Below are positions 3,068 to 32,761 of a DNA stretch of 64,000 nt, piece by piece. Location of the stretch: positions 62,001 through 126,000 of IMG/VR virus record IMGVR_UViG_3300024239_000015, one strand, 5' to 3'. Numbering within the stretch: the stretch's first letter is position 1; every line of letters starts with the position of its first letter. Both the position numbers and the translations under genes were made by a program. The notes under the pieces were generated by a model, which was given only the letters and a program-made list of their open reading frames with translations, was not told the DNA's origin and made no database searches.

Positions 3068-3086
3068 GTGATATTCCTTCGATGTC

Positions 3087-3117
3087 AAAAAAGAGGGAGT
3101 TTCGACTCCCTCTTTTT
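3087..3117. terminator. Bidirectional intrinsic terminator
   Basis: AAAAAAGAGGGAGT-TTCG-ACTCCCTCTTTTT. Confidence 0.85.
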
Positions 3118-3172
3118 ATTATTTTTAATTGGGGGTAAACTCTCCCCTCTCAGTGCTAACGGTTTGTTTCGA

Positions 3173-3496
3173 TCAGCCGAACGATTTTCGTGCGTCCGTT
3201 TCGTTATCAAACCAACGACACCCCCAGTACGAACAATCAACTGGGTTGAAATAGTTGATAAACCCGTCTTCGTGTTTCTTACTTACGGCATAGGCCAGAC
3301 ACGCTTCACGGAAGGTACGTCCTTCAGAAGTCCCCACCAGACTCGCTCCAGCGGACTGCCCGGTACATGCGTACCCTTCTACCCAAATCTCGTAGGTTTT
3401 TGATGGCATGTTATCGGACAATGTACTACGTTCCAATTCCAATGCATCTTCAACACCGCGATGTCTTTCTTTTAGTCGTCCCACTTTCTGGTTCAT
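3173..3496 (-). CDS. Conserved phage hypothetical protein
   Basis: IWVEGYACTG...YWGCRWFDNETDARKSFG resembles a small family seen in many tailed phages; GGAG RBS. Confidence 0.6.
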   Translation of the reverse strand: MNQKVGRLKERHRGVEDALELERSTLSDNMPSKTYEIWVEGYACTGQSAGASLVGTSEGRTFREACLAYAVSKKHEDGFINYFNPVDCSYWGCRWFDNETDARKSFG

Positions 3497-16603: not shown

Positions 16604-17335
16604 CTAAAACTCCTTGCTTTGTGGGGTATGCTCTAACGAGAGCAACGACACCTTTAACTTCTTACGCTTCGTGTACTCGTCTTTGGACAGCGTCTGCACG
16701 CTCACGTGGTCAGAGTCAAGATTCCAGAACGTATCGCTCTTTGCGCCTTTGACTTTGATCTCGTAGTAACCAGCCTCTACTTTTCGATCTGGAGACACCC
16801 AAAGCTCAGTACTGCATTCTAAGTACAAGGTAAACTCATACTGGAATTTCTGATCCCCAAATCGCTCCGTTTGGGTTTCATCCAACCAGAGCTTTCCAAT
16901 GACGTCAGGGGTGATGCTGTAGCGACGACGGTTGTACCCTACCAGCCAATGCTCGTTGGTTTTCACGACGTCACTTAAAAGCTTCACGTCAGGTTTCAGT
17001 GCTAAACGATACGGTAATGCGTAGATATAATACCCGCCTTTAAACCCGTCGTTCTCCCGATCCCCCCATAGAAAGTCCCACAGGACGTTTCCATACCCTA
17101 CTACACACTCTAGTACTGAGAGACTCACACAGACTCTCGGTAAGCTGGTGTCTTCAACGTTCGCTGAGCGTGCAGCCACACGAGGTGTAAACTCTTTGAT
17201 CCCACTGTCTTTGGAGATGTGCAGCATCACGGGGTGTTCAGCAGTGCGTTCCACAGGAGTCACTAAGTTACGTTTATCAGGAAACGTAATCTTCAGGAAT
17301 TGCTCCAGGTCTTTGTAGTCTTTCGTAAAGTCCAT
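16604..17335 (-). CDS. Putative virion head protein
   Basis: In the protease operon; C-terminal SLE protease-type site. Confidence 0.55.
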   Translation of the reverse strand: MDFTKDYKDLEQFLKITFPDKRNLVTPVERTAEHPVMLHISKDSGIKEFTPRVAARSANVEDTSLPRVCVSLSVLECVVGYGNVLWDFLWGDRENDGFKGGYYIYALPYRLALKPDVKLLSDVVKTNEHWLVGYNRRRYSITPDVIGKLWLDETQTERFGDQKFQYEFTLYLECSTELWVSPDRKVEAGYYEIKVKGAKSDTFWNLDSDHVSVQTLSKDEYTKRKKLKVSLLSLEHTPQSKEF

Positions 17336-17344
17336 TCGCTCCTC

Positions 17345-18067
17345 CTAAAGCCGTAGTAACTTTTCTGTCCCTTCCACACGCTCAGAAGGATTCACTAACG
17401 CACCGATTAAACCTTCATCGTAGTACGCACCCATCAACCGTGAAATCGTACTCGTCGCACTGTAGAGTACACTACTAAAAGGAACAAACTCGTAGTTGCG
17501 TTTCTCTAAGTCTGCTGGTGTTTCTAACGTGTGTCGCCAGTACTGCTTCTTATTCCCAGCCACACGCGTCATCACTGCAGCCATCAACTGAATTACAGTA
17601 CGGTCAGCCCCCAAACGAACCTTGTTGTACACGCCTGCACGACCGTACAAGTTACCTAAGTCAAACGGAGTGAAATACCAAGGCACATACCCAGAGGCAA
17701 TAAAGAAGTCAAAGATCTCATACGTGATGGTATCACGTACGATCACCTTGCGGGTAGGAAACACCACACTGTTGGGTGCAAAGTAAAACTCAATGTACTC
17801 CAGTTTCCCTTGGGTGTATCGACTACTCCCCGTAGGAGTGATCTCCACCAGTGTCGTGATTTTAGAGACCGCGTACGCGTCTCCAGACTGAAGCGCAAAA
17901 ACACCGAGGACGAAGGTCTCGTCCCCGAATGCTCCTAAGCCTTTCTCAAAGTACTTGGCTGGGACGTGTAACCGACACCCTGTGGTGGTGATCACACTCC
18001 CATCGTCCAACGTCTTCAACGTCTGGTTTACGCGCACTGCGTCTCGTTTGAGTGCGAGTAAATCCAT
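17345..18067 (-). CDS. Conserved virion-associated protein (phiKZ gp176-like by synteny)
   Basis: Position between the protease and vRNAP beta; size matches. Confidence 0.55.
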   Translation of the reverse strand: MDLLALKRDAVRVNQTLKTLDDGSVITTTGCRLHVPAKYFEKGLGAFGDETFVLGVFALQSGDAYAVSKITTLVEITPTGSSRYTQGKLEYIEFYFAPNSVVFPTRKVIVRDTITYEIFDFFIASGYVPWYFTPFDLGNLYGRAGVYNKVRLGADRTVIQLMAAVMTRVAGNKKQYWRHTLETPADLEKRNYEFVPFSSVLYSATSTISRLMGAYYDEGLIGALVNPSERVEGTEKLLRL

Positions 18068-18073
18068 ACGACG

Positions 18074-19501
18074 TTACTCCAAGGTCGCAGTAAACATACC
18101 TGCTACAAACGCACAGACTTTCGCTACTAACGCACGGTAAGCGTTTTTACGGACGTCATCGTCTGGGTACTTTTCAGCAAAGGCGTCGATTGCACGGATA
18201 AACTCCAGTGCATCACTCCCATTGTAAAGTGTGTGACAGACGATTTGCTGTACGGCAAAGTAAGGACGTTTGATCAAGTCGTAGTCGCTGAACATCGCTA
18301 ACGCTTCATTTAAGTGGCGTAACAAGTTCTCTTCCAGTGACCCTTCACCTACGTTGGCTAATACCACGTCTTGCTCTTGTGCTTCATGACACACACGACG
18401 CATGACGTTGGAGATACTCTCTCGTAAGCGTTGTCCCATTTGGTCTTCTGACTGCGTAATGCGAGTTTTCTCATTCGCTAAGAACGTACGGGTTAACGTC
18501 TCGTTCTGTGCCAGTAACTCATTGCTGTCACGCACTTGAGTAGACAATGCTGACCCGATGATTGCATCTGCACTACCGCCATTGGCTAAGTAGTCTTCGT
18601 AGTGACGTGCGGATACTTCAATCACTAGCTGTCCTTCTGCATTTGCTGCAGCAGGGAAGTTGATCACCACACGGTCTGACTTCGCGTGGATGTCCTGCCG
18701 CTCAATCTCTGCAATGCAGTAGTACGCAGCAGCACTGAACAAATCCACCATCTGGTTGGTGTACTGAGCCATCGTAGACGCTACACCTTCTGCTGGTGTT
18801 TCATCTACTAAGTTACGTGCCATCAAGAACAACACCAACATCTCAGAGACGTTGACTTGGTTTAAGGCTAAACAGTTGACGATGTCACCTGACACGAAGT
18901 ACTTGTTGTACACGGACGTTAAGAAGTCAGCACCCTGTGCAGCTACGTGCTCTAACACCGTGTCGTCTAACACACCAGAGCCTGTGGCGATCAGTGCTTT
19001 GAGTTCGTCCTCACTGCGTGCTGGGAAGTTCTTAAAGCCCATCGCCATGGCTGTGCCTGGCTGGTACGTACGGGTAGCAACAGGACGAATCAGCTCATGT
19101 AGAGTGTCGTTTTGAAACACGTCAGCAGGACAGCACTCCACGATCACGTAAGGAGTCATCGGTACTTCTTTGACGTCAGCACTTACCGCTTCGTACACAG
19201 CGCGAATCTGTGGATTCACGACGTCTTTTGAAAACTTCAACTGGGCTTGTAAGCGTGCTTTGAAGTTTTCGATTTCGTGATTCAGCGTGTCGTCATGGTT
19301 CAGTGCACGTACGTCTTCGCCGTTAGTGACGGACTCGATATACATGCTGTCTTCCATGGCGATCTCTGCTTGTGACACAGGAGCACACGTTTCTAAAATA
19401 GCCGCAAGAGGAGTCTCTGGTAAAACACGGAGTACGATTCCACGTTCTTTCAGTTGCTCGTCGATACGCTGTGCGTTTTGTAATGCAATAGGACTAAGCA
19501 C
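18074..19501 (-). CDS. Virion structural/head protein (phiKZ gp177-like by synteny)
   Basis: Likely GTG start at 19501 with GGAGG RBS; AME site near N-terminus. Confidence 0.55.
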   Translation of the reverse strand: MLSPIALQNAQRIDEQLKERGIVLRVLPETPLAAILETCAPVSQAEIAMEDSMYIESVTNGEDVRALNHDDTLNHEIENFKARLQAQLKFSKDVVNPQIRAVYEAVSADVKEVPMTPYVIVECCPADVFQNDTLHELIRPVATRTYQPGTAMAMGFKNFPARSEDELKALIATGSGVLDDTVLEHVAAQGADFLTSVYNKYFVSGDIVNCLALNQVNVSEMLVLFLMARNLVDETPAEGVASTMAQYTNQMVDLFSAAAYYCIAEIERQDIHAKSDRVVINFPAAANAEGQLVIEVSARHYEDYLANGGSADAIIGSALSTQVRDSNELLAQNETLTRTFLANEKTRITQSEDQMGQRLRESISNVMRRVCHEAQEQDVVLANVGEGSLEENLLRHLNEALAMFSDYDLIKRPYFAVQQIVCHTLYNGSDALEFIRAIDAFAEKYPDDDVRKNAYRALVAKVCAFVAGMFTATLE

Positions 19502-19683: not shown

Positions 19684-22600
19684 TTAGCTGCGGTAAGCTT
19701 GAGCGGCTAACTCACCGATATGTTTTAAAAGGGTCGTCAAGGTCCCTTGTAATAAAGCAGACTCTACCATCCGTGCATTCACAGAACGGTAACTAAACTC
19801 TGCTCCTATCAAAGCACCAGACTCTGCCTTACGCTCGGTGTGGTACACCCCGCGTGTCACAGTTTTCATCTGATTACAGAAAACGATCTTATCGCCATCC
19901 GCTGAACCCAACGTAGAATCGATGTACACTTTGATCACGACTTTGTCGAGTTCTAAGTCTTCCACTCGTCCTGTAAGTGCGGCTTTCCCACCCCGTAACC
20001 GAGACTCTTTCGCACGCCGACGGTTTGCAGCGAGTACGATTTCTCGTAAAGACTCTGTCATGTCATCCACGTCCCCGTTGTACAGTACTTCCACACGCCC
20101 TACCTTTCCAGCGTATTTCGCTTTTGGAGCATTGCGTGCTAACGTACCAAGTTTCTCTAACGTTTGTTCGTCAAAGAGTCGAGTCCCTGCCGTAACAGAG
20201 TCTTCGATATAACACAGTACGTCATGAATGTCGAGTTCATCTCCAGGGTTGACGAGGTTCCTCACCCCTTGGGTAAAGTCCACAGAGAGCTCACGCACTT
20301 GTGTGGTGTTGGTTTCTAACTCTCTTGCGACTTCCGCAGAGATCACGTTGGAGTCTTCGTAGGTGGATGGTCCTTCCCACAACACGGTTTGTACCAGAGC
20401 ACCATTCATCCACGTGACTTGTTTTGGATTAAAGAAATCTCGTGTGAAGAACCCAGAGTTCCACATCACGATATCTCCCTCGCCGACGTCACTCCCTACG
20501 GTTAAGTCAGTGACTAAGTCGTGTGGTAGTGTCGTACCAGTCATCACTCCGTACTCACGTCCTAAAGGTACAGTTTCAGTCCCTAAGGCTGGATCGTCGT
20601 ACTGGATGACTAAAGACACAGGCGTGACTTCAGTGACCTTTCCTTTTCCTTTCGCGACCCAAGAGAACAACTCCCCTGTAGAATGAGCTAGGACAGTCTC
20701 GTAACCAGTCCGTACAGGTAACGCCCGATAGCCTTTTGCTGCAATTACGTGGCTCTGCTGTATATTTTGAAATGCGAGACGCGGACTTGCCTCACGATCT
20801 GAGAACGAGGTCGCTAACGCACACGCGCTCAAAATACTCGCTGTGTTCTCAGGATCAAACTCAGTCTTCGTTAACCCGTACAAGTCGTCTAGACGACTGT
20901 TTGGGGATAAGAAGGCGGTGACTCCTACCTCAGCGTTATCCACTGTGGCTTCTGAAACAATCCCTAAGTCCGTCTCGTGGAACTCACGGGTTCTACGCAC
21001 CAGACTACGTGACGTCCGCCCACCTGTACCTGAAAGAGTAATGTTCGATTGCTCTTTCAGGTTTTGGATGACGTTAGACTCCTCTACAATACTCACTGCG
21101 GTGTCGTTTTGTAAAGCCATCCAGACTGCGTTGGGGTTGATCTCCACTTTCGCTTTCGTAGTGTGTGGGTTTGTACGGTATTGCTTGATCCCTTTCACTA
21201 ACTCGTTGTACACCACTGCTGAGATCCGCTCATAGCCTTTCACACGACGATACCGTGCGTCAGATTCGTTTGGATGCTCGTCTGTAGTGAGTAACTCCGC
21301 ACTACGGAAGAGTAATTCAGGAAGCGTGGTAGGCTCTCCTAGGCGTTTTAAAACGTCTAGTGTAATCGGGTCAATAAACCCATCAAACAACGACACCAAC
21401 TCCCTCGTGTACCGTCCGCCTAAGCCCATGTTGTACATAATCGTTTCGTATACTTCTGGAGAGTCATACTCGTGGTAAGAGTACTTCTGCACTTCAGTAC
21501 TGAACCAGTTTAAGCTTGCTAATATAAGCATTGCTTTTGGATCATCAAAACGACTAAACACTAACGTCTGGTCTTTAAAGCGAATCGGAAACTCTTCAGG
21601 CTCTAACTCTAAGCGGGCACCACGAGTCACTACCCGAGGTTTGACTTTGAGGGACTGGATCAGTTGGGTTAAGCCCATACGGTGACCAAGCATAAACGCT
21701 AGAGGTATCTCTTTCCCTAAGTAAGAGACTTCAGCCATGTCAATCGGAGCTTTTGCACGATCTAACCCAAGGATGACTTCTAAGTGCTCCAGAGCTGTAC
21801 CGTCTTTTAACGACACAAAGCCTTGGGTGTCCATTAGTAACAAGTCACCTGTCTTGGTCAACCCACAAGGGAACTGACCGAGCTTCACGTGCTGGTCGTA
21901 CACGTCAGCACCAATCGCTTCTTTGAGTACACTGCTCTTAAAGACAAAGCGGTAGTTTTCGGTAGAGACCTCTTTAAAGGTTTTGCCTAGTGCACTATAG
22001 ACCCGAGGACAGACCTGCAAGTGGTCGAAGCTTTTACCGCGTGTGGTACGTAGTAAACTCGCTTGTTCCTTTTCAGTTACAGCAGAGACTAACCACTGGT
22101 TGTAGTCATACGCTTTCTTACTGCTACGATTCACAAACACTTTAGAGTAGTAACTACTCAACGCAACCCGGTAGGAATTCACTTTACGAATTGGATTGTC
22201 AGACCTTTGAATACGCATCCGGTACGTAGTTGACCCGGCTAAATATTCTCCACGTTCATTAATGATCGGTAATTTAAACCGCCACACCGAAGGGGCTCCG
22301 CCGATTGGGCTCAGTTTCACCGTGTGAATCTCGTACTCGTTGTACGCGTCTTTCACAGGTTCTATTTCATACCCAGTGACGTTTACACCAAAGTTCTGAG
22401 CGGAGAGCACCATCTGCGCAGTCCAGCGCGGGAGGGCGTAGTTGATTGACGTTTTGTGGAAATCTTCCAGTGTGGTTTCTAACATACTTTTGTCAAAGAT
22501 AAACGCACTGTCAGGAATACGTTTCTTCTTAAAGTGGGTCAGACGTTCTGGATCAATTTGCACTAAGTCGGCAAGTGTACCTTCTCCACGAGGGTTAGGA

Positions 22601-23790
22601 ATCTTTTTGTACGATTCACTCAACGCAATGGCACGTTTCTGCTCTGCTAAAGACAGTAACCCTTTCGCTGCTAAACGGTTGACGTGCTCCATGGGTTTAA
22701 CGTCCCACAGCGGTAAACTCTCTTCTGTGTCTTTTGGAGGCTCTACTGGAACCTCCGACGTCACAGTCTGGATACGTAAGGAGTTATCCGCAGGTAGCTC
22801 TGGTGTGTCTTCTGCTTCGTCTACGACTTCCGTAGGCGTTTGTAGTACAACCAGCTCCTCTCCGTTCTCGTCCTGTGTGGTAATGAGCTCTACACGCTCC
22901 CCTTGCGTCTGCAGTAACTGCAATTGCATCACAAAGCGATACAGTTGGATCTGTAACTCTTTAGGAGACGCTAATGCTTTCGGGTTACGTTCTGTAGGGT
23001 CTTTTCTCCAACTCCACAGTGTCCCTAAGTTTAATACCACGTAGCGACCTGAGAGTACAAACAGCAGGTTCACACGACTTAAGGTCGTTTCGTCCAACCC
23101 TTTGAGTAACTCGGAGTTGGACTCTTCTCCTAACCACGCCCAGAGCTCTGCTAAGAACAGCGTAAAGTCATTCGTTAACGGTTCTAACGTACTGCGATTG
23201 ACTGCTTTGCGGAAGTTACGTAACTGAGGTAAGCTTGGTAAAACCTCAGGCAGTTCCATCCGAATAAACTGATGGTGGTCTGGAAGTTTCTCTGCTGTAC
23301 TTTTTATAGTCGCCAGTAACGTATTGTACGTATTCCAGAACTCGTGATACCGTGTTAAAGGTACTACACGGTAGCGGTACATGTGCTGCAGTAACGCGTA
23401 GTTAAACACAGGCAACGCACGTGTGTCACGGGCTGGTACGTCTAACGACAGCAAGCGGCGGATGTTTCTTTCTTTACGCCGATACGCTTGAATCAAGCCA
23501 TCAGGAGACACCAGTTTCTTCACTGGGTTTCCTTCCAGTGTAGAGAGTGTTGCTACATGCTCTACCAGTATAGGACCGTTTCTCTTTTGGAAGAATACGT
23601 CTTTCTCTGTAGGACCTAACTCCAACTCACTGGTAGGGAGGTAATGCACCACGCTTTGGAGTGGGAGTTCGAAACTCTCCAGCGTATGAAACGCAGGTTG
23701 TTTAAATAAGGTATAGGTCCTTACCCCACGTTTGTAATAGAAATTATCAAACGTAAGGGCTTCTAAACCTAATTGAAGGAAATCTGACAT
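19684..23790 (-). CDS. Virion RNA polymerase beta subunit, N-terminal part (phiKZ gp178-like)
   Basis: 1368 aa; beta motifs SGTGGR, HETDLGIVSEATVDN..VG, YEDSNVIS, GDKIVFCNQMK. Confidence 0.9.
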   Translation of the reverse strand: MSDFLQLGLEALTFDNFYYKRGVRTYTLFKQPAFHTLESFELPLQSVVHYLPTSELELGPTEKDVFFQKRNGPILVEHVATLSTLEGNPVKKLVSPDGLIQAYRRKERNIRRLLSLDVPARDTRALPVFNYALLQHMYRYRVVPLTRYHEFWNTYNTLLATIKSTAEKLPDHHQFIRMELPEVLPSLPQLRNFRKAVNRSTLEPLTNDFTLFLAELWAWLGEESNSELLKGLDETTLSRVNLLFVLSGRYVVLNLGTLWSWRKDPTERNPKALASPKELQIQLYRFVMQLQLLQTQGERVELITTQDENGEELVVLQTPTEVVDEAEDTPELPADNSLRIQTVTSEVPVEPPKDTEESLPLWDVKPMEHVNRLAAKGLLSLAEQKRAIALSESYKKIPNPRGEGTLADLVQIDPERLTHFKKKRIPDSAFIFDKSMLETTLEDFHKTSINYALPRWTAQMVLSAQNFGVNVTGYEIEPVKDAYNEYEIHTVKLSPIGGAPSVWRFKLPIINERGEYLAGSTTYRMRIQRSDNPIRKVNSYRVALSSYYSKVFVNRSSKKAYDYNQWLVSAVTEKEQASLLRTTRGKSFDHLQVCPRVYSALGKTFKEVSTENYRFVFKSSVLKEAIGADVYDQHVKLGQFPCGLTKTGDLLLMDTQGFVSLKDGTALEHLEVILGLDRAKAPIDMAEVSYLGKEIPLAFMLGHRMGLTQLIQSLKVKPRVVTRGARLELEPEEFPIRFKDQTLVFSRFDDPKAMLILASLNWFSTEVQKYSYHEYDSPEVYETIMYNMGLGGRYTRELVSLFDGFIDPITLDVLKRLGEPTTLPELLFRSAELLTTDEHPNESDARYRRVKGYERISAVVYNELVKGIKQYRTNPHTTKAKVEINPNAVWMALQNDTAVSIVEESNVIQNLKEQSNITLSGTGGRTSRSLVRRTREFHETDLGIVSEATVDNAEVGVTAFLSPNSRLDDLYGLTKTEFDPENTASILSACALATSFSDREASPRLAFQNIQQSHVIAAKGYRALPVRTGYETVLAHSTGELFSWVAKGKGKVTEVTPVSLVIQYDDPALGTETVPLGREYGVMTGTTLPHDLVTDLTVGSDVGEGDIVMWNSGFFTRDFFNPKQVTWMNGALVQTVLWEGPSTYEDSNVISAEVARELETNTTQVRELSVDFTQGVRNLVNPGDELDIHDVLCYIEDSVTAGTRLFDEQTLEKLGTLARNAPKAKYAGKVGRVEVLYNGDVDDMTESLREIVLAANRRRAKESRLRGGKAALTGRVEDLELDKVVIKVYIDSTLGSADGDKIVFCNQMKTVTRGVYHTERKAESGALIGAEFSYRSVNARMVESALLQGTLTTLLKHIGELAAQAYRS

Positions 23791-23795
23791 TACGT

Positions 23796-23984
23796 TTACC
23801 TTCCTCGTTTCACAGGTTCCCCTGTGAGGTTATGTACAATCAAACTGACGGTGTCTCCGTTTGCGGTAATCCGCATCCGTCCGTCTAAGTCGATATAGTT
23901 GTTGCGTGACGACAACAACTTCTTAATTTCAGCATTCGCTTCATCGGACATCCAAATAGGCGAGCTACACATGTCTCCGTCGTT
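23796..23984 (-). CDS. Virion RNAP beta' subunit (gp180-like), exon 2
   Basis: Begins NDGDMC after the intron omega-G and completes the DxDGD motif. Confidence 0.85.
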   Translation of the reverse strand, partial: NDGDMCSSPIWMSDEANAEIKKLLSSRNNYIDLDGRMRITANGDTVSLIVHNLTGEPVKRGR

Positions 23985-24494
23985 CGTAGTGTTCAGGTGG
24001 GTTCGCGACACCCTCCCCGTCAGAGTGCGTCTCACGGCGCTCTAAGACCGCTGTGAGATTTCCTCACAGACCAGACTATATCAATCCCTCTTCCGCTAGT
24101 GCAAAAGTAGGGTGTTCCCATTTCGGACTCGCTTGAGCCCTACACCTTGCTAAAGGGTTAGTCGTTGAGCACACTTCATGCTTTACCTTTTAGTCAGTAA
24201 AGTTTAGAAGCTTCGCGGCTGGTTGTGCATTGTTTACAGTCCTTAGCGGTGAGTCGTAACTCACGTTTTATTTCAGCATAGACCATCTTGACACTTTTGT
24301 ACACCTTTCGGAACCGTGACGTATGTCCTTTCGAACTCCGCTTTGGTAGCCAAGCTTTAGCAGTTTCCAGCATTAGAGAACTTACACACCACACATTACT
24401 GTATAGTGGGACTTTAGAAACGTTTATGTTTTAACTATTGTGTAAAACACGCACTCCAGTATTAGGAGATTGATTAAAACACACGTTTCTTCAA
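23985..24494 (-). ncRNA. Group I self-splicing intron (IA-like) without homing endonuclease
   Basis: P AATGCTGGAAAC (24363-74), Q AACCAGCCGCGAAG (24211-24), R TCAACGACTA (24159-68), S GATATAGTC (24074-82); P7 GACUA/UAGUC; P3 GUUCUC/GGGAAC; P9 hairpin 24051-69; P1 U.G wobble; terminal G. Confidence 0.88.
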
Positions 24495-25940
24495 ATCTGC
24501 CCCCAAGCGCGGATAGCGCAGAGGGTTAACTTTCAAACTTCCTATCCACGTTTGCGACCCATCTACAACGGGATAACGTGGAGCTATAGTCTCTGTGGGT
24601 TGCCATTCTTCGTTGAGTTGGACTAAACGTAAAGACTCGCTGGTGGTTCTCACGCGTACAAAGGAAGGATATACCGAACCATCGTCGGTGATCGGATATC
24701 GCGTGATTGAACACGTTAATGTATCGATCTTCGGTAGTAAAGAAACGTACAGTAGTTCCCCTAACGTAATGGGGTATACGTGTTCTTTAGAGAACCCTTC
24801 TGGTAACTCACGAATATCAGCAAAGAACTTAAAGACCCGATCTGTGCGATACACTAACCCTAAGTAGTAGTTCTCTACATACACGGGACGGTTGCGCAGC
24901 CGATGGATTTCAAACCGGTTGATGAGTTTCTCTAACCCAGGACGAGTCGTGAAGTCTTCGATGGTTTTAGAGTCGAGTTGCACGAGTTCTTTCTGTAGTG
25001 TTTTCTTGTTGGTTAACCAAACATCCGTTTCCCCACCAAAGATTCTACCCAGCCACCCTGTTTGTAAACAGTGGAGCGTATGTAGTACCGCACCACGGGA
25101 GAACTGCCACAACCCCATCTCTGTGTCATTCACACGAGGGGCATCGGGACTGCCCAATAAAGCAGACGTCAGTGTCATTGGCGTAATGACGTTCCGTGTG
25201 CCATGGAAGGTTTTGCGCGCACCCCACTTCCCTTGCAACCAGCCTCGTTTTCCAGATACCATCCGTTTGATGTACAAATAAATAGCCACAGCAGTTTTCT
25301 GGATGGCAATCCGTGCGTTGTCGTATAAAGGAGAGGTAGACGACTCTTTCGTGTCTTGTAAAGACAGTGTAGCGGCTAAGAGTTTCCGGTAGAGGTCATT
25401 GATTTCATCTTCGGTGGTTTTACCGGGTTTCTCTTCGTGGATGTCTCGTAAGCCAGCGGGAATCACCAAGTGATACCGCATCAACGATTTCGCTTTGTAA
25501 CGCTCTAACACAGCAATACGTTCTTTACGGATGTCAGAACCTTCCGTGTTCCACTGGATTTTCTGCCAGTGTTCCATAAAGAACTGATAGCCTGTTTGTC
25601 CGTTTAAGGGGTCAGAGGCTACAAAGTCTTTACTAGCGTCGTCCCATAAAGCGTAGGCTTTGCCTGCCATCACTTGGGCATAAAACGCACGAAGCTTGAT
25701 AAGCTCCATGTAGATCTCTGGGTGGAACACTGTGGTTTTGAGGTCGATGTAACTTTCTTTTAAGTCTCTCTCCTCAGAGCCTTGGCGTCCAAAGGTGACC
25801 AGTGAGAATAAGCCATCGGGATGGTACTCAGTCCCCGCAGCGTTGTGGGTATCTAACACACGCACAGGACGCATGTATTTCACCGACTCTGGGGTGAGTT
25901 GTTCTATCCCTATATTAAAGGGAAGGGTTTCAAGCCTCAT
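24495..25940 (-). CDS. Virion RNAP beta' subunit (gp180-like), exon 1
   Basis: DGLFS..FG, VIPAGLRD, GKRGWLQ, RNVIT, RYP; ends RLGAD at the splice site. Confidence 0.9.
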
Positions 25941-25969: not shown

Positions 25970-28900
25970 ATGGAGACTGTGATGGTAAAGAAACTGGATA
26001 ACGTCGATGACTTTGACATTGACGACTTTGGGTTTGACGGAGACATGGATGATCCGTTTCGACCCAAGAGTGACCGAGAGATCGTAGCTGCTTTACCGAA
26101 AGATTTCTTAAGTGGTGTGAAGTCGTCTGTCACCGACCCAAGTTTTATGCGTCAGGTGTTACGCAAAGCGTTACCAAGTGGGTACAGTGACGCACTCGAC
26201 GTGGCAGACGACGTGGCGTACGCCGCCCAAGGGACGTACGATCACTTAGACCGTGAGCTTCGTCCAGCGGTCAAAGGATTGAAAGGGGCGCTTAAGCGAG
26301 TAAAAGCGTTAGCGACCCCCGTCCTACCCAAAGGGATAAGTGAGAAACTTGATAAATTACTCGAGTCAGAAGAAGAGTATAAAAGGCAGCAAACGGACTT
26401 TCGTGAAGAAGGAATTACGAAAGGGTTAGCGGAAATCTTTGCAGCGCAGACGAAGATTCAAAACGTCAAAGACCAAGACTCAGCAGACCGTGAAACCGTA
26501 CGGGACTTAGCAGAAGAGCAGCGTGCCAATACACAGCGTCAGCTACTCGCCAAAACAGCAGAAGGGATAGGCCACTTAGTTGGGTATCAAAACTCGATTG
26601 GTGTAAAGTTCCAACAAAAGTCATTAGAGCTACAGTACAGAACGTACTACGCCATCAAAGACTTGTTTGAATTAAACAAAGGCGCCGTCCCAGAGAACGT
26701 CAGTTTACTCCGTGGGATTTTAAAGAACACAGGTTTACCAGAAATCCAAAAGATCACCACCTCTGAGCAGATCAAACAAACCTTACAGGAAGGGTTGTTA
26801 GGCAAAGCGTACGAAGGGTTTGACGAGCACCGTCGGAAGTTCTTTGGTCGGTTCTTACAAAACGTCAGTGGGAAGATCAAAGAGTCAGGCAGCGCATTTG
26901 CGGAAGGGTTACGGGGTGGCAGCGATGCGTTAGAGTCGATCACCGATGGCGCTGAGATGCAAAAGGAGATGGGCGGGAGCTCAGCCAGCACTGCTGCTCA
27001 GATGGGCGGTATGTTTGTCGGTAGTATGTTAGGTAATAAAACCGCCAAAGCAATCAAGAAGATCACGTCTAAGATTCCTGGTGCGGATGAGAAACTGGAC
27101 AAGTACGGAGCGAAGTTAAGTTACTTGGTGTCCAACCGCGAAGGGTTGATGGAGAAGTTTGCACGGAACGACGAACAGCTTACGGAACGCGAGGGGATGC
27201 TCGGTAGCTTTGTGAACTGGGTAGGAGATCTGTTTAAAGACAGTATCCCACGGTATGGTTCTTACCAAGCCTTAGCCAAGACGGACACAGCGCAACTGAA
27301 CCAACCTGCAGTGTTTGATAACTTAGTCCGTAGCAGTATCGTCGAAGTTATCCCGACTTACTTAGCGAAGATCCTGCAATCGTTAGAAACATTCCGTACC
27401 GGACAGCCAGTGGATGAATTGCGTTACAATCACCAAACTGCAGAGTTTGTCTCGCGTCGTGACTTAACCGCAAAGATCCGTGAGCGTGCAATTACTGAGA
27501 CACAGTTAGGGACGTTGGATCGCCGTACCAACTCTCTGCTGGATGCTCTAGACCCAGAGAAACAACTGACAGAGAAAGAGCGGAAGAAAGTCCAAGCAGA
27601 ACTCGTGCGTCAAGCGCAGAGTAACAAACTGTTTGATCCAGAGACTTTAAGTGACTCGTGGAGACTGGAAGGCTCTTTAGGGAAAAAGACTGCAGAGAAA
27701 TTTAGTGGGTTGGTGGAGTCTAAGTTCAAACGGACGATCGATGGGAAGATTGATTACGACGACAAAGCCACACGGGATCTGTTAGTCAGTGCAAGTCGTT
27801 TGTACAACGAGTTATTGCAGTCTCTACCTGGGGATTTCAAGAACACTCAGATCTACGCAAACACCGGACTTAGAGACTTAGTGCGTGACACTGGGTTGAT
27901 TAAACGCAACGGAGACGATGAGTCTTACGACTTAAATGCGGTGACTGATCAATTCACTCAGTTTATCTCCGGGTCTCCTCGTGCGGTACCTCCCACTAGC
28001 GCTCCAATTACACCCAGTGTCGCTGCTGTACGTCAAGCACAGCAAGCGCAAACTCAACCGTTCTTTACACGCAACCCAGAGCCTATCTACGGCGCTACTA
28101 CACCCACCCAACCCTACCAGAACGCTTTTAGCGATAACGCTGTACAGCAGATCGTAGACGCGATAGAAGAGTCTTCTACTCGCGACTTACAAGTCTCTCA
28201 AACAGAGTCGTTAAAACAGATCGTGGAGTTGATCCAAGGCTTACCAGAACGCATGACGGTACTGACCGGAAATGTAACGGGTGGAGAGTCTGGTCCACAG
28301 ATGTCGAATCTGGAAAGAAACATCCGTGGTGGTTTGAAAGGTACTGCGAAAGGGTTATGGGGAGCCACTAAAGGGCTGTATAACTTTGGTGCTGGACTTC
28401 GGAACAAACTCTTTAAAGGAGCATGGTTCACTGGAAAATTTGGATGGAATCTCTTAACCAAAAAGGATAAAGAGAAAGACCAGCCGGATGACGTGTACGT
28501 ACCGGGGATGAAAGAGCCGATCTTACAGAAATGGAAGATGGCGCTAGGTTGGTACAAGGATGCCGAGACAGGAGAACCAATCTATTCGTTAAAAGACATC
28601 AAAGGTGTTGTACTCGATCGGTTTGATAAAGTAGTGTTATCTGCCGAAGACGCGAAGAACGCGTTCACGTCCGAAGGGAAGAGTTTACTGGATCGTGCAG
28701 TAAATCTTGCCAGAGGTCTGATTACAGGTCCTGGAGCTACGTTTGTAAAAACGATGTTCAAAAGCGTCACTAAACCTACTGAGTGGTTAAAGAACGGTCT
28801 GAAGTCAGCGTGGGCGTTTTACCACGCACACCAAGACATCTGTGTCAAAGGGGAAGAACCTACCGTGCGTCTTTACGCGAACTTAATGCGTAAAGGGTAC

Positions 28901-31900
28901 TACCACGACCAGCAGACACTGAAAACTATTTACTCCTTTAAAGACATCACAGGACCTGTGGTGGATAACTTTGGGAAAGTGGTGCTTTCCGTAGAGGACT
29001 TCCAAGCGGGCTTAGTCACGACTGACGGTAAACCACTGCGTACACCCGCGGAGCGTTTATACGCCATCGGGAAAAAAGGCGTAGGCTTAGCGGTTTCCGC
29101 TGGTAAGAAAGTATGGGAGCTTACGAAGAAAGCGCACGTCAAAACGTGGGGTTTACTCAAGAAAGGGTTAGGGTGGGTAGGTTCTGGCGTCAAAGGAAAC
29201 ATCGGTGTCTCGTTTGGGAGTCAGTCTGGCGACTCTGAAACGTTAGATCTGCAGTCCAAACAACTGGACGTCTTACTGCGTATCCATGACTTACTGATCC
29301 GTGGGTTTAAGTTTGAAGACGCTCCTTTAGGTGGGTATGGTGCAGCGGGTATCTTCGCAAAAGCCAAAGCCGCAGGAAAGAAAGCAGCAAGTAAACTCTC
29401 TGACGTAGAGATCTCCACCTTAGTCGATGACACCATGGATAAACTCAAGAAAATCGGTGTACCTGATGGGTATATCGAAAAACTGGAGAGTATCAAACAG
29501 GACATCGACTCTGCTGGCGGTTACAAAGAGTACCTGAAGGCTCAAAAGAAAAGCTTCTCTGAGAAACTCAAAGAACGCATTGCTGGAGAGGACAAACGGG
29601 AAAACTCGTGGGTGGACATTATCCGTGACCGTAAAGAAGCAGCGAAAGGGAAAATGACAGGGTGGAAAGATCGTGTCTTAGGAGACAAAGACAATCCATC
29701 GTGGTTAGGGAAGATTCTCTTTGCGATTGCTGGGTTAGGGACGTTGTTCACAACTGCCGTAGGAAAAGTCGTGAGTACACTAACGACGATGTGGGGAGGA
29801 GTGAAAGCGATTCGCGACACTGTACTCGCCACACAAGCTGCAGCTGGAGCAGCAGACTTACTGACTCCTGATGGGTTACCAGAAGGCGCGGACAAAAAAG
29901 GAAAGCTTCGTGCGAAAACGAAGCTAGGTCGTTTAGGTCAAGCGGCGTGGGGTGGGACCAAAGCTTTAGGACGCGGTGCGCTTAGTGTAGCGAAGTGGAC
30001 AGTAGGCATGCCTGCATTACTACTAGCACGGGGAGCACTCGGCTTAGGCGCGTTAGGTTTAGGCGCAGCAGCATCGATCCTAACGTCTCCTGTGGTTCTA
30101 GGCAGCCTTGCTGTTGGAGCTGTAGGGTATGGCGCTTATAAAGGCTATCGTGCGTTACGTGGCGAACTGAAGCCATTAGAGCGCTTACGCGCGGCAGAGT
30201 ACGGACGAGACCCTAACTCCATTGGTGACTTTGAAGACATCCGTGCGTTAGAAGAGAAACTCAGACCTCACTTGATCCTTTCTTCTAAGGGTCCTGCGTC
30301 GTTAGACAAAGAACTTCCATGGAAAGAACTCGTGGATATCTTTGGGATCGACACGAAAGACAAGACAGAAACGATGACGTGGGCCAACTGGTTCCAGTAC
30401 CGTTTTGCTCCTGTGTACTTACGGTGGGTGACGTTAGTACCTCAGTTCCAACCTGGGGTGACGTTAAGTGACCTCGACGGAAAACTCAAAGATTCCTTCA
30501 AGGTTCCTTACGCGGAGAAAGTCACGTGGCGTAAAGACGAAGCAGGGTATCCATACACGGTCGCTGCGGGTCCTTATGGTGAGAGTGACTCAGAGATGGG
30601 CGACTCTGTCGTTAAAGAGGAACTTACAGCACTCACTGCACTCTTTGGAGACGATGCTTTACGTGAGAAAGCCAAAGAGCGTTTAGCTGCTCAAGGCTCT
30701 GGCTCTGGGTCTTTAGGGTTTGTCGCTGGAATGAAAGACGGGATGCCTACAGCAGGCAGTGCGAAACTGGCTGAGTTCAGTGCACCACAACCGGGAAGAC
30801 AGAGTAACCTCAAAACGTACAAAGCGGGAGCTCTGGAGTACGTCACACCATCTACCCTACCGAACTCTGTGAACACCAAATTCACAGACACACTCACGAA
30901 TGAATTCGGACAGCGCAACAACAACATCGATGACTTTGCGGCAGTGCGTCTGAAAACGTACGGGTTGGTGACGTTAGAGGTAGAGAAAGTCAACAGCGTG
31001 TTAGCGCTAGAGTCTGACGTCTTACAGCAAGTGGTGTACAACGCAGCAGGTAGAGCAGAGTTGGTCAAAGACCCCATGCATTACCTGATGCTGTACGCGT
31101 CTCACTTTGGGGTAAACACGGAGAACCCAGACCAACGTACCGAGTGGTTGTACTGGTTCCAGTACCGGTTTACTCCGGTGTTACTGAACTTTATCGCCGC
31201 AGTGAAGCGAATTGACAAAAACGCAGAACCACGTAGTGCGTCTACGAAGTTTAGTAAAGGACGGTTACACGAGATCGCCAAAGCGATTGCGTCCTCTACG
31301 ACTGTGGTGGAGAAGAAACCTACGTCTGTGTGGTCAGTGTACGCTGTAGCGTTCCCAGGTTACGCGATGAACGAACACGCAGCGTCAGTGGATGTCCACT
31401 TAGCAGCACTGAAGAAAGATGCTGAAGAAGTCGTGTATCAAACACCAGGAAGCTTACGTGCGAGTAACCTGAAGGGAGACCGTGAGGTTAAACTCAAGAC
31501 AACCTACACAGCGACCGGTGGGGTTCCTGATGTCTTTAAACCGGGGAATACCGCAGGGTTAGGACAAAGTGGGATCTTCCCAAGCAGTGGGAAGTCAGGT
31601 CAACCGATAGCTCCGTTTATGGCAGGTAGTGGTGCTGGGTATCTGGAGTTACCGAACCCCAAAGGAGACGGTACGCCAGAAGCCTACGCTGCTTTACTCA
31701 AAGCCGCAGCAGAAGCCGCTGGGATTGAACCGGGAATCCTAGAGACGTTTGCAAAGATTGAATCGTCGTTTAGAACCAAGGTGAGAAATCCAGAAAGCTC
31801 TGCAACGGGTTTATTCCAGTTCACTAACCAGACGTGGAAGGAACAGCTGGGGAAGCATGCTGCTACGTACGGGATTCCAAAAGACGCAAGTCCCACAGAC

Positions 31901-32761
31901 CCGAAAGCTTCAGCGCTGCTTGCAGCAGAATACATCAAAGCGAACCGTGCTCAATTAGAGTCGAAGATAGGACGTAAAGCATCTTTGAACGATATCTACT
32001 TAGCGCATCACTTTGGTGTGGGCGGAGCGAGTAAGTTACTCAATAGCTCTCCGATGGAAGATGGTGTAAAAGTTCTACCTGCAGCTGCGGGTGCGAATCC
32101 TTCTGTGTTCTTGGAAGGGAATCGTCATCGTAGTGTGGCTGAGGTACTGGCGTATATCGACAAGAAAGTCAAAGGAAACGTTCCTGCGTTCTTTGACGAC
32201 TCTGCGGTAGGACAACCTACACTCATAGCAACAGCGCAGCAAAGCTTTGCAGCGGATGCACCAGCGACTCCTGCAGAAGTCAAACGGTTGCAAAGCTTGG
32301 GGATCTACGATCAAGCTGCGAAACAACTCGTCACGCCACGCACAGCAGAATTGGTGCAAGTCCAACCCTCTGCAGCCAGTGGCGGGTTTAACGCTGTCCC
32401 TCGTGGAATCGCAGCAGCACCAGCCACTACAGTAGCCGCAGGAGAGCAACTGAGCGCAGTACAACGCATGGCTCAGGAGAAACGGACGCAAGCTGCACAA
32501 ACCCAGCAGCAAGCCAGACACGTCCAACAACTCCAACACACAACCATGGCACAAACGGTAGACTACGCGAAACGGACAACGGAAGCGACCGAGCTTACAG
32601 CGTCCACACTTCAGCGTATAGAAAAACTACTCTCGGTATTCCAACCCAAGGAGCCCGTACAAACCAAACCAGATGAGCCCAGTAGCAACACCAACTTAGC
32701 TCAGCAACGGTTTGCAAGTAAAGCACCACAACCGGTTGTGAAGACCACACGGGACGTTTAG
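25970..32761 (+). CDS. Giant tail protein with lytic transglycosylase domain (phiKZ gp181-like)
   Basis: 2263 aa; SLT motifs AKIESSF, SSATGLFQF..TW, YLAHHFG; divergent from beta' as in phiKZ. Confidence 0.88.
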   Translation: METVMVKKLDNVDDFDIDDFGFDGDMDDPFRPKSDREIVAALPKDFLSGVKSSVTDPSFMRQVLRKALPSGYSDALDVADDVAYAAQGTYDHLDRELRPAVKGLKGALKRVKALATPVLPKGISEKLDKLLESEEEYKRQQTDFREEGITKGLAEIFAAQTKIQNVKDQDSADRETVRDLAEEQRANTQRQLLAKTAEGIGHLVGYQNSIGVKFQQKSLELQYRTYYAIKDLFELNKGAVPENVSLLRGILKNTGLPEIQKITTSEQIKQTLQEGLLGKAYEGFDEHRRKFFGRFLQNVSGKIKESGSAFAEGLRGGSDALESITDGAEMQKEMGGSSASTAAQMGGMFVGSMLGNKTAKAIKKITSKIPGADEKLDKYGAKLSYLVSNREGLMEKFARNDEQLTEREGMLGSFVNWVGDLFKDSIPRYGSYQALAKTDTAQLNQPAVFDNLVRSSIVEVIPTYLAKILQSLETFRTGQPVDELRYNHQTAEFVSRRDLTAKIRERAITETQLGTLDRRTNSLLDALDPEKQLTEKERKKVQAELVRQAQSNKLFDPETLSDSWRLEGSLGKKTAEKFSGLVESKFKRTIDGKIDYDDKATRDLLVSASRLYNELLQSLPGDFKNTQIYANTGLRDLVRDTGLIKRNGDDESYDLNAVTDQFTQFISGSPRAVPPTSAPITPSVAAVRQAQQAQTQPFFTRNPEPIYGATTPTQPYQNAFSDNAVQQIVDAIEESSTRDLQVSQTESLKQIVELIQGLPERMTVLTGNVTGGESGPQMSNLERNIRGGLKGTAKGLWGATKGLYNFGAGLRNKLFKGAWFTGKFGWNLLTKKDKEKDQPDDVYVPGMKEPILQKWKMALGWYKDAETGEPIYSLKDIKGVVLDRFDKVVLSAEDAKNAFTSEGKSLLDRAVNLARGLITGPGATFVKTMFKSVTKPTEWLKNGLKSAWAFYHAHQDICVKGEEPTVRLYANLMRKGYYHDQQTLKTIYSFKDITGPVVDNFGKVVLSVEDFQAGLVTTDGKPLRTPAERLYAIGKKGVGLAVSAGKKVWELTKKAHVKTWGLLKKGLGWVGSGVKGNIGVSFGSQSGDSETLDLQSKQLDVLLRIHDLLIRGFKFEDAPLGGYGAAGIFAKAKAAGKKAASKLSDVEISTLVDDTMDKLKKIGVPDGYIEKLESIKQDIDSAGGYKEYLKAQKKSFSEKLKERIAGEDKRENSWVDIIRDRKEAAKGKMTGWKDRVLGDKDNPSWLGKILFAIAGLGTLFTTAVGKVVSTLTTMWGGVKAIRDTVLATQAAAGAADLLTPDGLPEGADKKGKLRAKTKLGRLGQAAWGGTKALGRGALSVAKWTVGMPALLLARGALGLGALGLGAAASILTSPVVLGSLAVGAVGYGAYKGYRALRGELKPLERLRAAEYGRDPNSIGDFEDIRALEEKLRPHLILSSKGPASLDKELPWKELVDIFGIDTKDKTETMTWANWFQYRFAPVYLRWVTLVPQFQPGVTLSDLDGKLKDSFKVPYAEKVTWRKDEAGYPYTVAAGPYGESDSEMGDSVVKEELTALTALFGDDALREKAKERLAAQGSGSGSLGFVAGMKDGMPTAGSAKLAEFSAPQPGRQSNLKTYKAGALEYVTPSTLPNSVNTKFTDTLTNEFGQRNNNIDDFAAVRLKTYGLVTLEVEKVNSVLALESDVLQQVVYNAAGRAELVKDPMHYLMLYASHFGVNTENPDQRTEWLYWFQYRFTPVLLNFIAAVKRIDKNAEPRSASTKFSKGRLHEIAKAIASSTTVVEKKPTSVWSVYAVAFPGYAMNEHAASVDVHLAALKKDAEEVVYQTPGSLRASNLKGDREVKLKTTYTATGGVPDVFKPGNTAGLGQSGIFPSSGKSGQPIAPFMAGSGAGYLELPNPKGDGTPEAYAALLKAAAEAAGIEPGILETFAKIESSFRTKVRNPESSATGLFQFTNQTWKEQLGKHAATYGIPKDASPTDPKASALLAAEYIKANRAQLESKIGRKASLNDIYLAHHFGVGGASKLLNSSPMEDGVKVLPAAAGANPSVFLEGNRHRSVAEVLAYIDKKVKGNVPAFFDDSAVGQPTLIATAQQSFAADAPATPAEVKRLQSLGIYDQAAKQLVTPRTAELVQVQPSAASGGFNAVPRGIAAAPATTVAAGEQLSAVQRMAQEKRTQAAQTQQQARHVQQLQHTTMAQTVDYAKRTTEATELTASTLQRIEKLLSVFQPKEPVQTKPDEPSSNTNLAQQRFASKAPQPVVKTTRDV

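What the first reader, a model, noticed from the sequence alone, without database searches (positions are those of the whole stretch)
23985..24494. ORF-less group I intron splitting the catalytic motif of virion RNAP beta'
Seen: the beta' ORF ends RLGAD|LKKRVF* and a separate frame resumes NDGDMC 510 nt later. The gap has a full group I core: P/Q/R/S elements, P3, P7 with P7.1/7.2-type extra stems, P9 and a terminal G. A long P1 pairs exon GAU with GUC (24410-12, U.G wobble) and AGAAACGU with ACGUUUCU. Splicing gives a 544-aa subunit. Established: phiKZ and PhiPA3 carry endonuclease-encoding introns in the orthologous gene. Here no endonuclease remains, and the AT-rich P1 loop may be its deletion scar. 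Inference: active vRNAP production depends on ribozyme splicing, a possible regulatory checkpoint.
Basis: partly seen in the sequence, partly recalled or inferred. Interest (0 to 1): 0.75.

Follow-up and report, generated by a model that had tools for sequence, protein, structure and literature searches.

The report
ORF-less group I intron in phage RNAP

Summary
On the minus strand, a 482-codon exon (24495-25940) and a 62-codon exon (23796-23984) match the two ends of one phage RNA polymerase family. Uninterrupted homologues are collinear across the junction GAD|NDGD, with no indel. The 510 nt between them match Rfam Intron_gpI at E 6e-10 (44.6 bits, below the 50-bit gathering score). They show a P1 helix with a U.G wobble at the 5' splice site, P2-P9, P7.1/P7.2 and a terminal G. 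phiKZ has a 1443-nt intron at the same codon boundary of the orthologous gene gp180, carrying the HNH nuclease gp179. New here: a metagenome contig (L027) holds this same intron with a 475-aa HNH/NUMOD1 nuclease gene, homologous to gp179. That gene replaces 17 nt of the P1 loop. Both forms co-occur in one sample. So the P1 loop is the nuclease slot, though deletion versus insertion is unresolved. The genome carries five more group I introns. One lies at the homologous site of the paralogous non-virion beta' gene. No RNA data exist, so splicing is inferred. The "regulatory checkpoint" has no support. This is a new member of a known kind.

The parts
24495..25940 (-). Exon 1 of the vRNAP beta' N-terminal subunit gene (482 codons, ends ...RLGAD)
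   Evidence: phrog_2986 positions 1-484 of 539, E 3.6e-167. tblastn finds 297 phage records covering at least 80% of it. Gene order matches RAY gp162-164 and phiKZ gp181-178.
23985..24494 (-). Group I intron, 510 nt, no endonuclease ORF
   Evidence: RF00028 44.6 bits, E 6e-10. Same insertion site as the phiKZ intron. MFE z = -2.47.
23796..23984 (-). Exon 2 (62 codons plus stop; starts NDGDMC)
   Evidence: phrog_2986 positions 480-538, E 8e-11. It is contiguous with exon 1 in RP31 and PhiEaH1 and in the alignment.
24410..24497 (-). P1 stem-loop. Exon GAU plus intron UU pair with AAGUC; U.G wobble at 24495:24412. Extended by an 8-bp helix and a 9-10-bp helix.
   Evidence: Pair check 5/5, 8/8 and 9/9. 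MFE of the isolated region gives this fold, z = -3.97.
24474..24476 (-). In-frame TAA stop, six codons into the intron. It ends translation of unspliced RNA before the ribozyme core.
   Evidence: Sequence and ORF list.
24444..24460 (-). 17 nt of the P1 terminal loop. In variant L027 these are replaced by 1453 nt carrying a 475-aa HNH/NUMOD1 homing-endonuclease gene.
   Evidence: blastn and alignment of L027 against the window. Pfam HNH_3 and NUMOD1. E 5e-48 to phiKZ gp179.
24387..24408 (-). P2 hairpin (9 bp, GUAA loop)
   Evidence: phiKZ has an equivalent hairpin with a different sequence.
24218..24371 (-). P4 (GCUGG/CCAGC), P5 and a roughly 130-nt P5 extension. The spurious 66-aa ORF lies here.
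   Evidence: The extension motif recurs in the genome's DNA polymerase intron and in the PS119XW intron.
24074..24163 (-). P7 (GACUA/UAGUC) enclosing P7.1, P7.2, the P3 3' strand (24119..24114) and P8
   Evidence: P7 covaries (U-A to C-G) in L020.
23985..24069 (-). P9 (7 bp), P9.1, P9.2 and the terminal G (23985)
   Evidence: The 3' tail GAACACUACG resembles phiKZ GAACAUAACG.
19684..23790 (-). Downstream vRNAP beta-like subunit gene (phiKZ gp178 orthologue), uninterrupted here
   Evidence: phrog_3148, E 0. There is no second RF00028 hit in the window.
25970..32761 (+). Divergent 2263-aa protein with an SLT lytic transglycosylase domain (phiKZ gp181-like). Serves as a gene-order marker.
   Evidence: Pfam SLT.

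Best explanation
This is a group I (subgroup IA-like) self-splicing intron in the gene for the N-terminal beta' subunit of the virion-packaged multisubunit RNA polymerase of a 233-kb phiKZ-like jumbo phage.

Inferred mechanism. The pre-mRNA folds so that exon GAU and intron UU pair with the internal guide AAGUC. Guanosine bound in P7 attacks after U24495. The terminal G23985 then occupies the G site and the exons are ligated, GAU|AAC. This creates the Mg-binding motif G-A-D-N-D-G-D and a 544-aa subunit. Unspliced RNA gives a protein that stops six codons into the intron and lacks two of the three catalytic aspartates. Active vRNAP therefore needs splicing.

The intron belongs to a mobile lineage that targets the xxD|xDGD site of jumbo-phage beta' genes. 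That lineage normally carries an I-HmuI-like HNH/NUMOD1 nicking endonuclease gene in the P1 loop. This copy is the ORF-less form and has no nuclease of its own. A nuclease-carrying sister form circulates in the same phage population.
For: Shown:
- Split family match and collinear junction.
- RF00028 full-length match, E 6e-10.
- P1 with U.G wobble, P2, P3, P4, P7, P7.1, P7.2, P9 and the terminal G all pair fully.
- Four introns at this site or its paralogous site fold independently into the same hairpin series with different stem sequences. They are ours, phiKZ, L020 and the own-genome nvRNAP beta' intron.
- P7 and P9 carry compensatory changes.
- The phiKZ intron sits at the identical codon boundary and scores 92.2 bits. 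KTN4, the same species, is intronless.
- All intron-bearing alleles have GAT before the site, whereas four of the five intronless IMG/VR alleles examined have GAC.
- L027 is the same intron plus a 475-aa HNH gene in the P1 loop. Its flanking intron sequence is 100% identical over 126 nt.
- Both forms occur in run X2, at depths of about 37 and 26.
- The same DNA is found in four metagenome runs and in contig L012.

From the literature: phiKZ gp180 is the vRNAP subunit bearing DFDGD (PMC10612078). phiKZ gp56, gp72 and gp179 were predicted to be intron nucleases (PMC10914365).
Against: - There is no RNA evidence. The only RNA-labelled run (X6) holds other organisms' intron cores, and no joints were seen.
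- The Rfam score is below the gathering threshold (44.6 vs 50 bits).
- Canonical splicing gives Asn after the first Asp, where 12 other homologues have Phe or Tyr.
- A P10 helix adjacent to P1 cannot form with exon 2 AAC. In phiKZ, UU can pair with AA.
- ONT-cappable-seq did not detect splicing of the phiKZ introns under the conditions tested (PMC10914365).
Confidence: 0.88

Rival explanations
1. Direction of change: the ORF-less form is the older state, and the HNH gene invaded its P1 loop later or was brought in by recombination with a diverged nuclease-carrying intron. On this reading the 17 nt are not a deletion scar.
For: - The two forms differ by more than one clean deletion. The hairpin loop and the spacer also differ.
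- Eight synonymous differences cluster at -4 to -19 of exon 1 in L027, next to 126 nt of identity. This looks like a recombination or co-conversion tract from another donor.
- Four of the five other introns in this genome also lack ORFs.
Against: - The ORF-less loop keeps CUCC...GGAG followed by GUGUUU. This resembles the SD-sequestering hairpin and the GTG-TTT start of the L027 nuclease gene.
- phiKZ, L020, L027 and the paralogous intron all carry homologous nucleases in the same loop, so a nuclease in that loop looks ancestral to the lineage.
Confidence: 0.4
2. The splice junction is shifted by +1 or +2 nt at both ends (GAUU|AC or GAUUU|C). This would restore the usual Tyr or Phe (D-Y/F-D-G-D).
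For: The intron starts UU and exon 2 starts AA, so such shifts stay in frame. They give the residue seen in all 12 other homologues.
Against: The shift would end the intron in A rather than G. It would also move the cleaved bond away from the only U.G pair in P1. The 3' tails of phiKZ, L020 and the paralogous intron align with ...ACG| as the end.
Confidence: 0.06
3. It is a dead intron. The RNA no longer splices and the gene is a pseudogene or is expressed as two separate polypeptides.
For: Sub-threshold Rfam score. Asn in the motif. No nuclease. No RNA data.
Against: - Every core helix is intact.
- The ribozyme part seen in L027 is 100% identical.
- Exon 2 has no start codon or ribosome-binding site of its own. 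The only upstream start is a GTG inside P9.x.
- The catalytic triad would be split between two chains.
- The phage is abundant, complete with terminal repeats, and seen in four runs.
Confidence: 0.04
4. Splicing is a regulated checkpoint that times or limits vRNAP production.
For: Only general precedent. T4 intron splicing depends on translation and growth state, as cited in PMC10914365.
Against: Nothing in the sequence points to a sensor or switch. Intronless alleles of the same gene work in close relatives of phiKZ and of L020. A selfish-element explanation is therefore enough.
Confidence: 0.1

Closest known systems
phiKZ gp180/gp179 intron (AF399011 187788..186346, minus strand)
   Same: Orthologous gene and identical codon boundary (GAD|xDGD). 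U at -1 and a terminal G. Same helix series, including P7.1/P7.2 and the P9 extensions. Similar 3' tail. The nuclease slot is in the P1 loop. The nuclease of the sister variant L027 is homologous to gp179 (29% identity, E 5e-48).
   Different: The phiKZ intron is 1443 nt with an ORF, against 510 nt with none. The stems differ in sequence; blastn finds no phiKZ match. Ours has a roughly 130-nt P5 extension. The first residue of exon 2 is Phe in phiKZ and Asn here.
PhiPA3 gp210 intron (Birkholz et al. 2024, PMC11620839)
   Same: A group I intron in a jumbo-phage vRNAP gene, placed next to catalytic aspartates. It carries an HNH/NUMOD1 nuclease of the same family. 54 nt of the core are 85% identical to ours.
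   Different: It lies in the beta subunit gene (gp211/209, the phiKZ gp178 homologue), not in beta'. It carries an active nickase with a demonstrated role in phage competition.
Classical subgroup IA phage introns (T4 td/nrdB/sunY, SPO1 and Bastille DNA polymerase, Twort), including ORF-less examples
   Same: They interrupt conserved sites of nucleic-acid-metabolism genes. They have P7.1/P7.2, an early in-frame stop, and an optional nuclease ORF looped out of a peripheral stem (my own knowledge, plus PMC11878797).
   Different: Different host genes. Here the nuclease slot is in P1, whereas in the T4 introns it is in P6 or P9.1 (my own knowledge). The host is a jumbo phage with its own RNA polymerases.

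Membership tests
Group I intron (Rfam RF00028) | Statistically significant full-length covariance-model match | tested here: met
   Model positions 1-253 of 253, 44.6 bits. E 6e-10 in the region and 4.3e-8 in the window. This is below Rfam's curated gathering score of 50 bits, so it is absent from the default scan.
Group I intron (Rfam RF00028) | P1 helix between the 5' exon end and an internal guide, with a U.G wobble at the cleavage site | tested here: met
   GAUUU/AAGUC, U24495.G24412.
Group I intron (Rfam RF00028) | Terminal guanosine at the 3' end of the intron | tested here: met
   G at 23985. The tail aligns with those of phiKZ, L020 and the paralogous intron.
Group I intron (Rfam RF00028) | Conserved core P3-P8 with the P3/P7 pseudoknot and conserved J6/7 and J8/7 sequences | tested here: met
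   P3 6/6, P4 5/5 and P7 5/5 pairs. UCAACGACUA and GAUAUAGUCU are shared with nine other introns.
Group I intron (Rfam RF00028) | Removal restores one reading frame collinear with uninterrupted homologues | tested here: met
   544 aa, with no indel against RAY, SA002, RP31, KTN4, L014 and L020.
Group I intron (Rfam RF00028) | P10 pairing of the 3' exon with the guide, adjacent to P1 | tested here: not met
   Exon 2 AAC cannot pair with the AA next to GUC. Only a non-adjacent AACG/CGUU pairing is possible, by inspection. P10 is weak or dispensable in many group I introns (my own knowledge), so this is not disqualifying.
Group I intron (Rfam RF00028) | Guanosine-dependent self-splicing | not testable with these tools
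   No RNA run holds this phage.
Subgroup IA | Extra stems P7.1 and P7.2 between P7 and the 3' strand of P3 | tested here: met
   CCUU/AAGG and GGGCUC/GAGUCC hairpins at 24156-24125. The criterion itself is from my own knowledge (Michel and Westhof 1990).
Mobile (homing) group I intron | Encodes a homing endonuclease | tested here: not met
   No ORF over 66 aa. No Pfam hit for either ORF, and no PHROG hit for the 66-aa ORF. The sister variant L027 does encode one.
phiKZ gp179-type beta' D|xDGD intron lineage | Same insertion site, same nuclease slot (P1 loop), homologous nuclease | tested here: met
   Site. Slot and nuclease, via L027.

The most novel reading that the evidence does not exclude
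The population snapshot may capture an ongoing contest between a nicking HNH homing endonuclease and its targets. The same intron occurs with and without the nuclease in one sample. The two forms differ by eight clustered synonymous changes at -4 to -19 of exon 1. The ORF-less allele has an unusual first exon-2 codon (AAC in place of TTY/TAY). These flank changes could be immunity mutations against a nuclease which, like I-HmuI, can also cut intron-bearing alleles. The same intron-plus-nuclease lineage also sits at the homologous D|FDGD site of the paralogous non-virion beta' gene in this genome. That would imply homing across paralogues, between the two RNA polymerases of one phage.
Probability: 0.2. 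Interest if true: 0.6.

Novelty: new member of a known kind. Interest (0 to 1): 0.42.

Why it matters
The intron affects annotation. The vRNAP beta' gene of this phage is one 544-aa product and not two ORFs. The same applies to phiKZ itself, whose GenBank record lacks exon 2. The xxD|xDGD site of jumbo-phage beta' genes turns out to be a recurrent homing site. It is occupied in phiKZ, in this phage, in an unrelated IMG/VR lineage, and in the paralogous nvRNAP gene. The with-nuclease and without-nuclease pair in one natural population is a clean example of the homing-endonuclease gain/loss cycle. It also offers a testable system for nuclease-mediated competition of the kind shown for PhiPA3 against phiKZ. 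It is not a new kind of element.

Tried and rejected
- Rfam at gathering thresholds found nothing in the window. The hit appears only with E-value thresholds.
- The exon 1 protein has no PDB sequence match and no Pfam match.
- A search for exon-2-sized proteins, meant to find other split alleles, found nothing.
- Exact-pattern scans of viral contigs found neither the intronless junction nor the variant's loose end.
- The look-up of encoding contigs for the L027 nuclease gave only two more short contigs. The exon 2 flank of the nuclease-bearing form is therefore unknown.
- Read laying showed no joints and no RNA from this phage. X6 matches only 24045-24391, and those matches come from other organisms' introns.
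- MAFFT plus RNAalifold on ten introns recovered only P7 and P9, because the variable hairpins misalign. I relied instead on independent folding of homologous segments and on explicit pair checks.
- I did not use the covariance-model or the structure-pair tools on the whole intron. It is too long for the model limits, and I avoided typing a long structure string.
- Intein, frameshift and assembly-artefact readings were rejected. The insert is a ribozyme fold with stops in frame, and it is identical in independent assemblies.

Full report
**What is there.** The window is bases 62001-126000 of a 233,377-bp IMG/VR phage genome with direct terminal repeats. It was assembled from subsurface and soil metagenomes.

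On the minus strand, an ORF at 24474-25940 (488 aa) matches PHROG 2986 ("RNA polymerase beta subunit") over profile positions 1-484 of 539, E 3.6e-167. A short frame at 23796-24035 matches positions 480-538, E 8e-11.

The flanking genes are a 1368-aa phrog_3148 subunit downstream and a divergent 2263-aa SLT-domain giant protein upstream. This reproduces the order gp181-gp180-gp178 of phiKZ and gp162-gp163-gp164 of Erwinia phage RAY. In RAY the middle gene is annotated "vRNAP beta' subunit 1". phiKZ gp180 is the vRNAP subunit that carries the DFDGD Mg-binding motif (PMC10612078).

**The junction.** Exon 1 ends GGG GCA GAT at 24495. Exon 2 starts AAC GAC GGA GAC at 23984. The gap is 510 nt and the joined frame is 544 aa.

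In Ralstonia phage RP31 and Erwinia phage PhiEaH1, the tblastn matches to the two exons abut exactly. A protein alignment with RAY, SA002, RP31, KTN4, L014 and L020 shows no indel at the junction.

One oddity stands out. The residue after the first Asp is Phe or Tyr in all 12 other sequences examined, but Asn here. Shifting both splice sites by +1 or +2 nt would give Tyr or Phe. That shift would break both the U.G rule and the terminal-G rule, and it disagrees with the aligned 3' tails of related introns. I keep it as a low-probability rival.

**The RNA.**
- Rfam's Intron_gpI model matches 24051-24429(-) over its full length at 44.6 bits. E is 6e-10 for the region and 4.3e-8 for the window. 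This is under the 50-bit gathering score, so the default scan is empty.
- Explicit pair checks give the following helices:
  - P1: GAUUU/AAGUC, with U24495.G24412.
  - Two P1 extension helices of 8 bp and 9 bp.
  - P2: 9 bp with a GUAA loop.
  - P3: GUUCUC/GGGAAC.
  - P4: GCUGG/CCAGC.
  - P7: GACUA/UAGUC.
  - P7.1 and P7.2, lying between P7 and P3'.
  - P8, P9 (7 bp), two further 3' hairpins, and G23985.
- The isolated P1 region folds as predicted, z = -3.97. The whole intron has z = -2.47.
- A TAA six codons into the intron stops ribosomes before the core.
- The only sizeable internal ORF (66 aa) lies in a roughly 130-nt P5 extension. The sequence motifs of that extension recur in other introns. 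The ORF has no family match, so it is spurious.

**Relatives at the same site.**
- phiKZ. gp180 (annotated as 490 aa) is followed by gp179 (HNH_3) and then by an unannotated exon 2. KTN4, the same species, has an uninterrupted 550-aa gene. DNA alignment puts the phiKZ intron at L004:2555-3997 (1443 nt), with junction GAT|TTC. This is the same codon boundary as here. It ends ...GAACAUAACG, against ...GAACACUACG here. Its core scores 92.2 bits. The gp179 ORF starts 55 nt after the splice site and runs into the guide sequence, so it sits in the P1 loop.
- An unrelated IMG/VR lineage. L017, L020 and L021 have the intron at GGD|YDGD. It carries a homologous HNH ORF in the same slot plus a second, DUF559-type ORF. 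L016, L019 and L023 are intronless alleles of that lineage.
- This phage's own paralogous non-virion beta' gene (phrog_2987). It carries an intron with an HNH ORF at NCD|FDGD.
- Structure conservation. Homologous segments of four of these introns fold independently into the same P7.1, P7.2, P8, P9, P9.1 and P9.2 hairpins, with different stem sequences. P7 and P9 show compensatory changes.
- Every intron-bearing allele has GAT before the site, whereas four of the five intronless IMG/VR alleles checked use GAC.
It is in the neighbouring beta gene.

**The nuclease slot.** Laying public contigs on the locus showed the intron-containing DNA intact in run X1. In run X2 the assembly graph branches at 24414-24443.

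The loose end led to metagenome contig L027. Its structure is as follows:
- The first 179 nt are exon 1 plus the first 34 intron bases.
- The last 126 nt are 100% identical to 24443-24318.
- In between, 1453 nt replace the 17 nt at 24460-24444.

The insert encodes a 475-aa protein with HNH_3 and NUMOD1 domains. It is 29% identical to phiKZ gp179, E 5e-48. A hairpin that sequesters an AGGAG ribosome-binding site precedes it, as in phiKZ and L020.

The ORF-less loop keeps CUCC...GGAG followed by GUGUUU. This resembles that hairpin and the GTG-TTT start. Several small differences remain, however, so a single clean deletion does not explain the pair.

L027 also differs from the window at eight positions between -4 and -19 of exon 1, all synonymous, beside 126 identical bases. 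That pattern suggests a recombination or co-conversion tract, or selection on a nuclease recognition site.

The P1 loop is thus shown to be the nuclease slot. Whether this copy lost the gene or the other copy gained it is open; I put it at about 60:40 in favour of loss.

**Mechanism and limits.** The best explanation is canonical group I self-splicing. It is required to assemble the D-x-D-G-D motif and hence to make an active virion RNA polymerase. The intron copy has no nuclease of its own.

The evidence for this is structural and comparative. No RNA data for this phage exist. ONT-cappable-seq did not detect splicing of the phiKZ introns (PMC10914365), although a functional phiKZ gp180 requires it.

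Nothing supports a regulatory role. Intronless alleles function in close relatives, so a selfish-element account is enough.

**Context and novelty.** The genome holds at least six group I introns:
- one in the RNAP beta-like gene (phrog_3295);
- two in the phrog_2987 gene;
- one in the DnaB helicase gene;
- one in the DNA polymerase gene;
- this one.

Only one of the six carries a nuclease gene. Group I introns in jumbo-phage RNAP genes, ORF-less phage introns and HNH homing nickases are all known (PMC11620839, PMC11878797, PMC12908238). This is a new member of a known kind. The extra interest comes from the shared beta' homing site across lineages and paralogues, and from the natural polymorphism with and without the nuclease.

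Noticed in passing
G000:C1 5377-5767(-), 16870-17221(-), 18523-18903(-), 174242-174571(+), 204017-204368(+) (loci L006-L010; outside the window): There are five more RF00028 matches in the same phage genome. They split an RNAP beta-like gene (phrog_3295), the nvRNAP beta'-like gene (phrog_2987, two introns), a DnaB-like helicase and a DNA polymerase. Only one of them carries an HNH ORF.
   Followed up: partly
L007/L009: genome about 16805-18358(-): The second intron of the paralogous phrog_2987 gene sits at NCD|FDGD. This site is homologous to the one in the window. It carries a 324-aa HNH nuclease in its P1 loop. This suggests the same intron lineage occupies both RNA polymerases of one phage.
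   Followed up: partly
L027 (Ga0247725_1017336), also L028 and L029; window 24496-24514: The nuclease-bearing variant differs from the window at eight synonymous positions clustered at -4 to -19 of exon 1, and at intron base 4. The next 126 exon bases are identical.
   Followed up: partly
window 23982-23984: The first codon of exon 2 is AAC (Asn), at the position where 12 other homologues have Phe or Tyr in the D-F/Y-D-G-D catalytic loop.
   Followed up: partly
L004 (phiKZ AF399011) 3998-4183: The phiKZ reference record does not annotate exon 2 of gp180. The annotated 490-aa gp180 ends in intron read-through and so lacks the DGD part of the catalytic motif. About ten phiKZ-like records show the same gap.
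   Followed up: yes
L002 (PS119XW MN103543) about 2982-3361: There is an unannotated group I intron (RF00028, 75.7 bits) in a gene annotated as hypothetical. It is inserted directly after NADFDGD, four codons downstream of the site used here, with a compact P1 (GGAGAU/GGUCUCC).
   Followed up: partly
L020 6481-7152: The same-site intron of an IMG/VR lineage holds a second ORF (DUF559; PHROG homing or HNH endonuclease families) that appears to lie in the P5 region. This probably explains why RF00028 misses that intron.
   Followed up: partly
L003 (Clostridium phage c-st AP008983) 3001-3098 and 5287-5348: An unannotated 100-nt stretch is 77% identical to the P4-P5-extension part of this intron, but there is no full group I match. 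A RAGATH-18 RNA (61 bits, above its threshold) lies just downstream of the OrfB gene of an IS transposase pair.
   Followed up: no
window 24128-24171: In the wastewater run X6, very deep contigs (word depth about 2200) match only the P7-to-P3' core at 85-99% identity. This shows that close relatives of this ribozyme core are abundant elsewhere.
   Followed up: no
L013 (IMGVR_UViG_3300033997_000220), contig end: A 67.7-kb contig of the same phage ends 27 nt before the 5' splice site. This is consistent with an assembly break at the polymorphic flank in that sample too.
   Followed up: no
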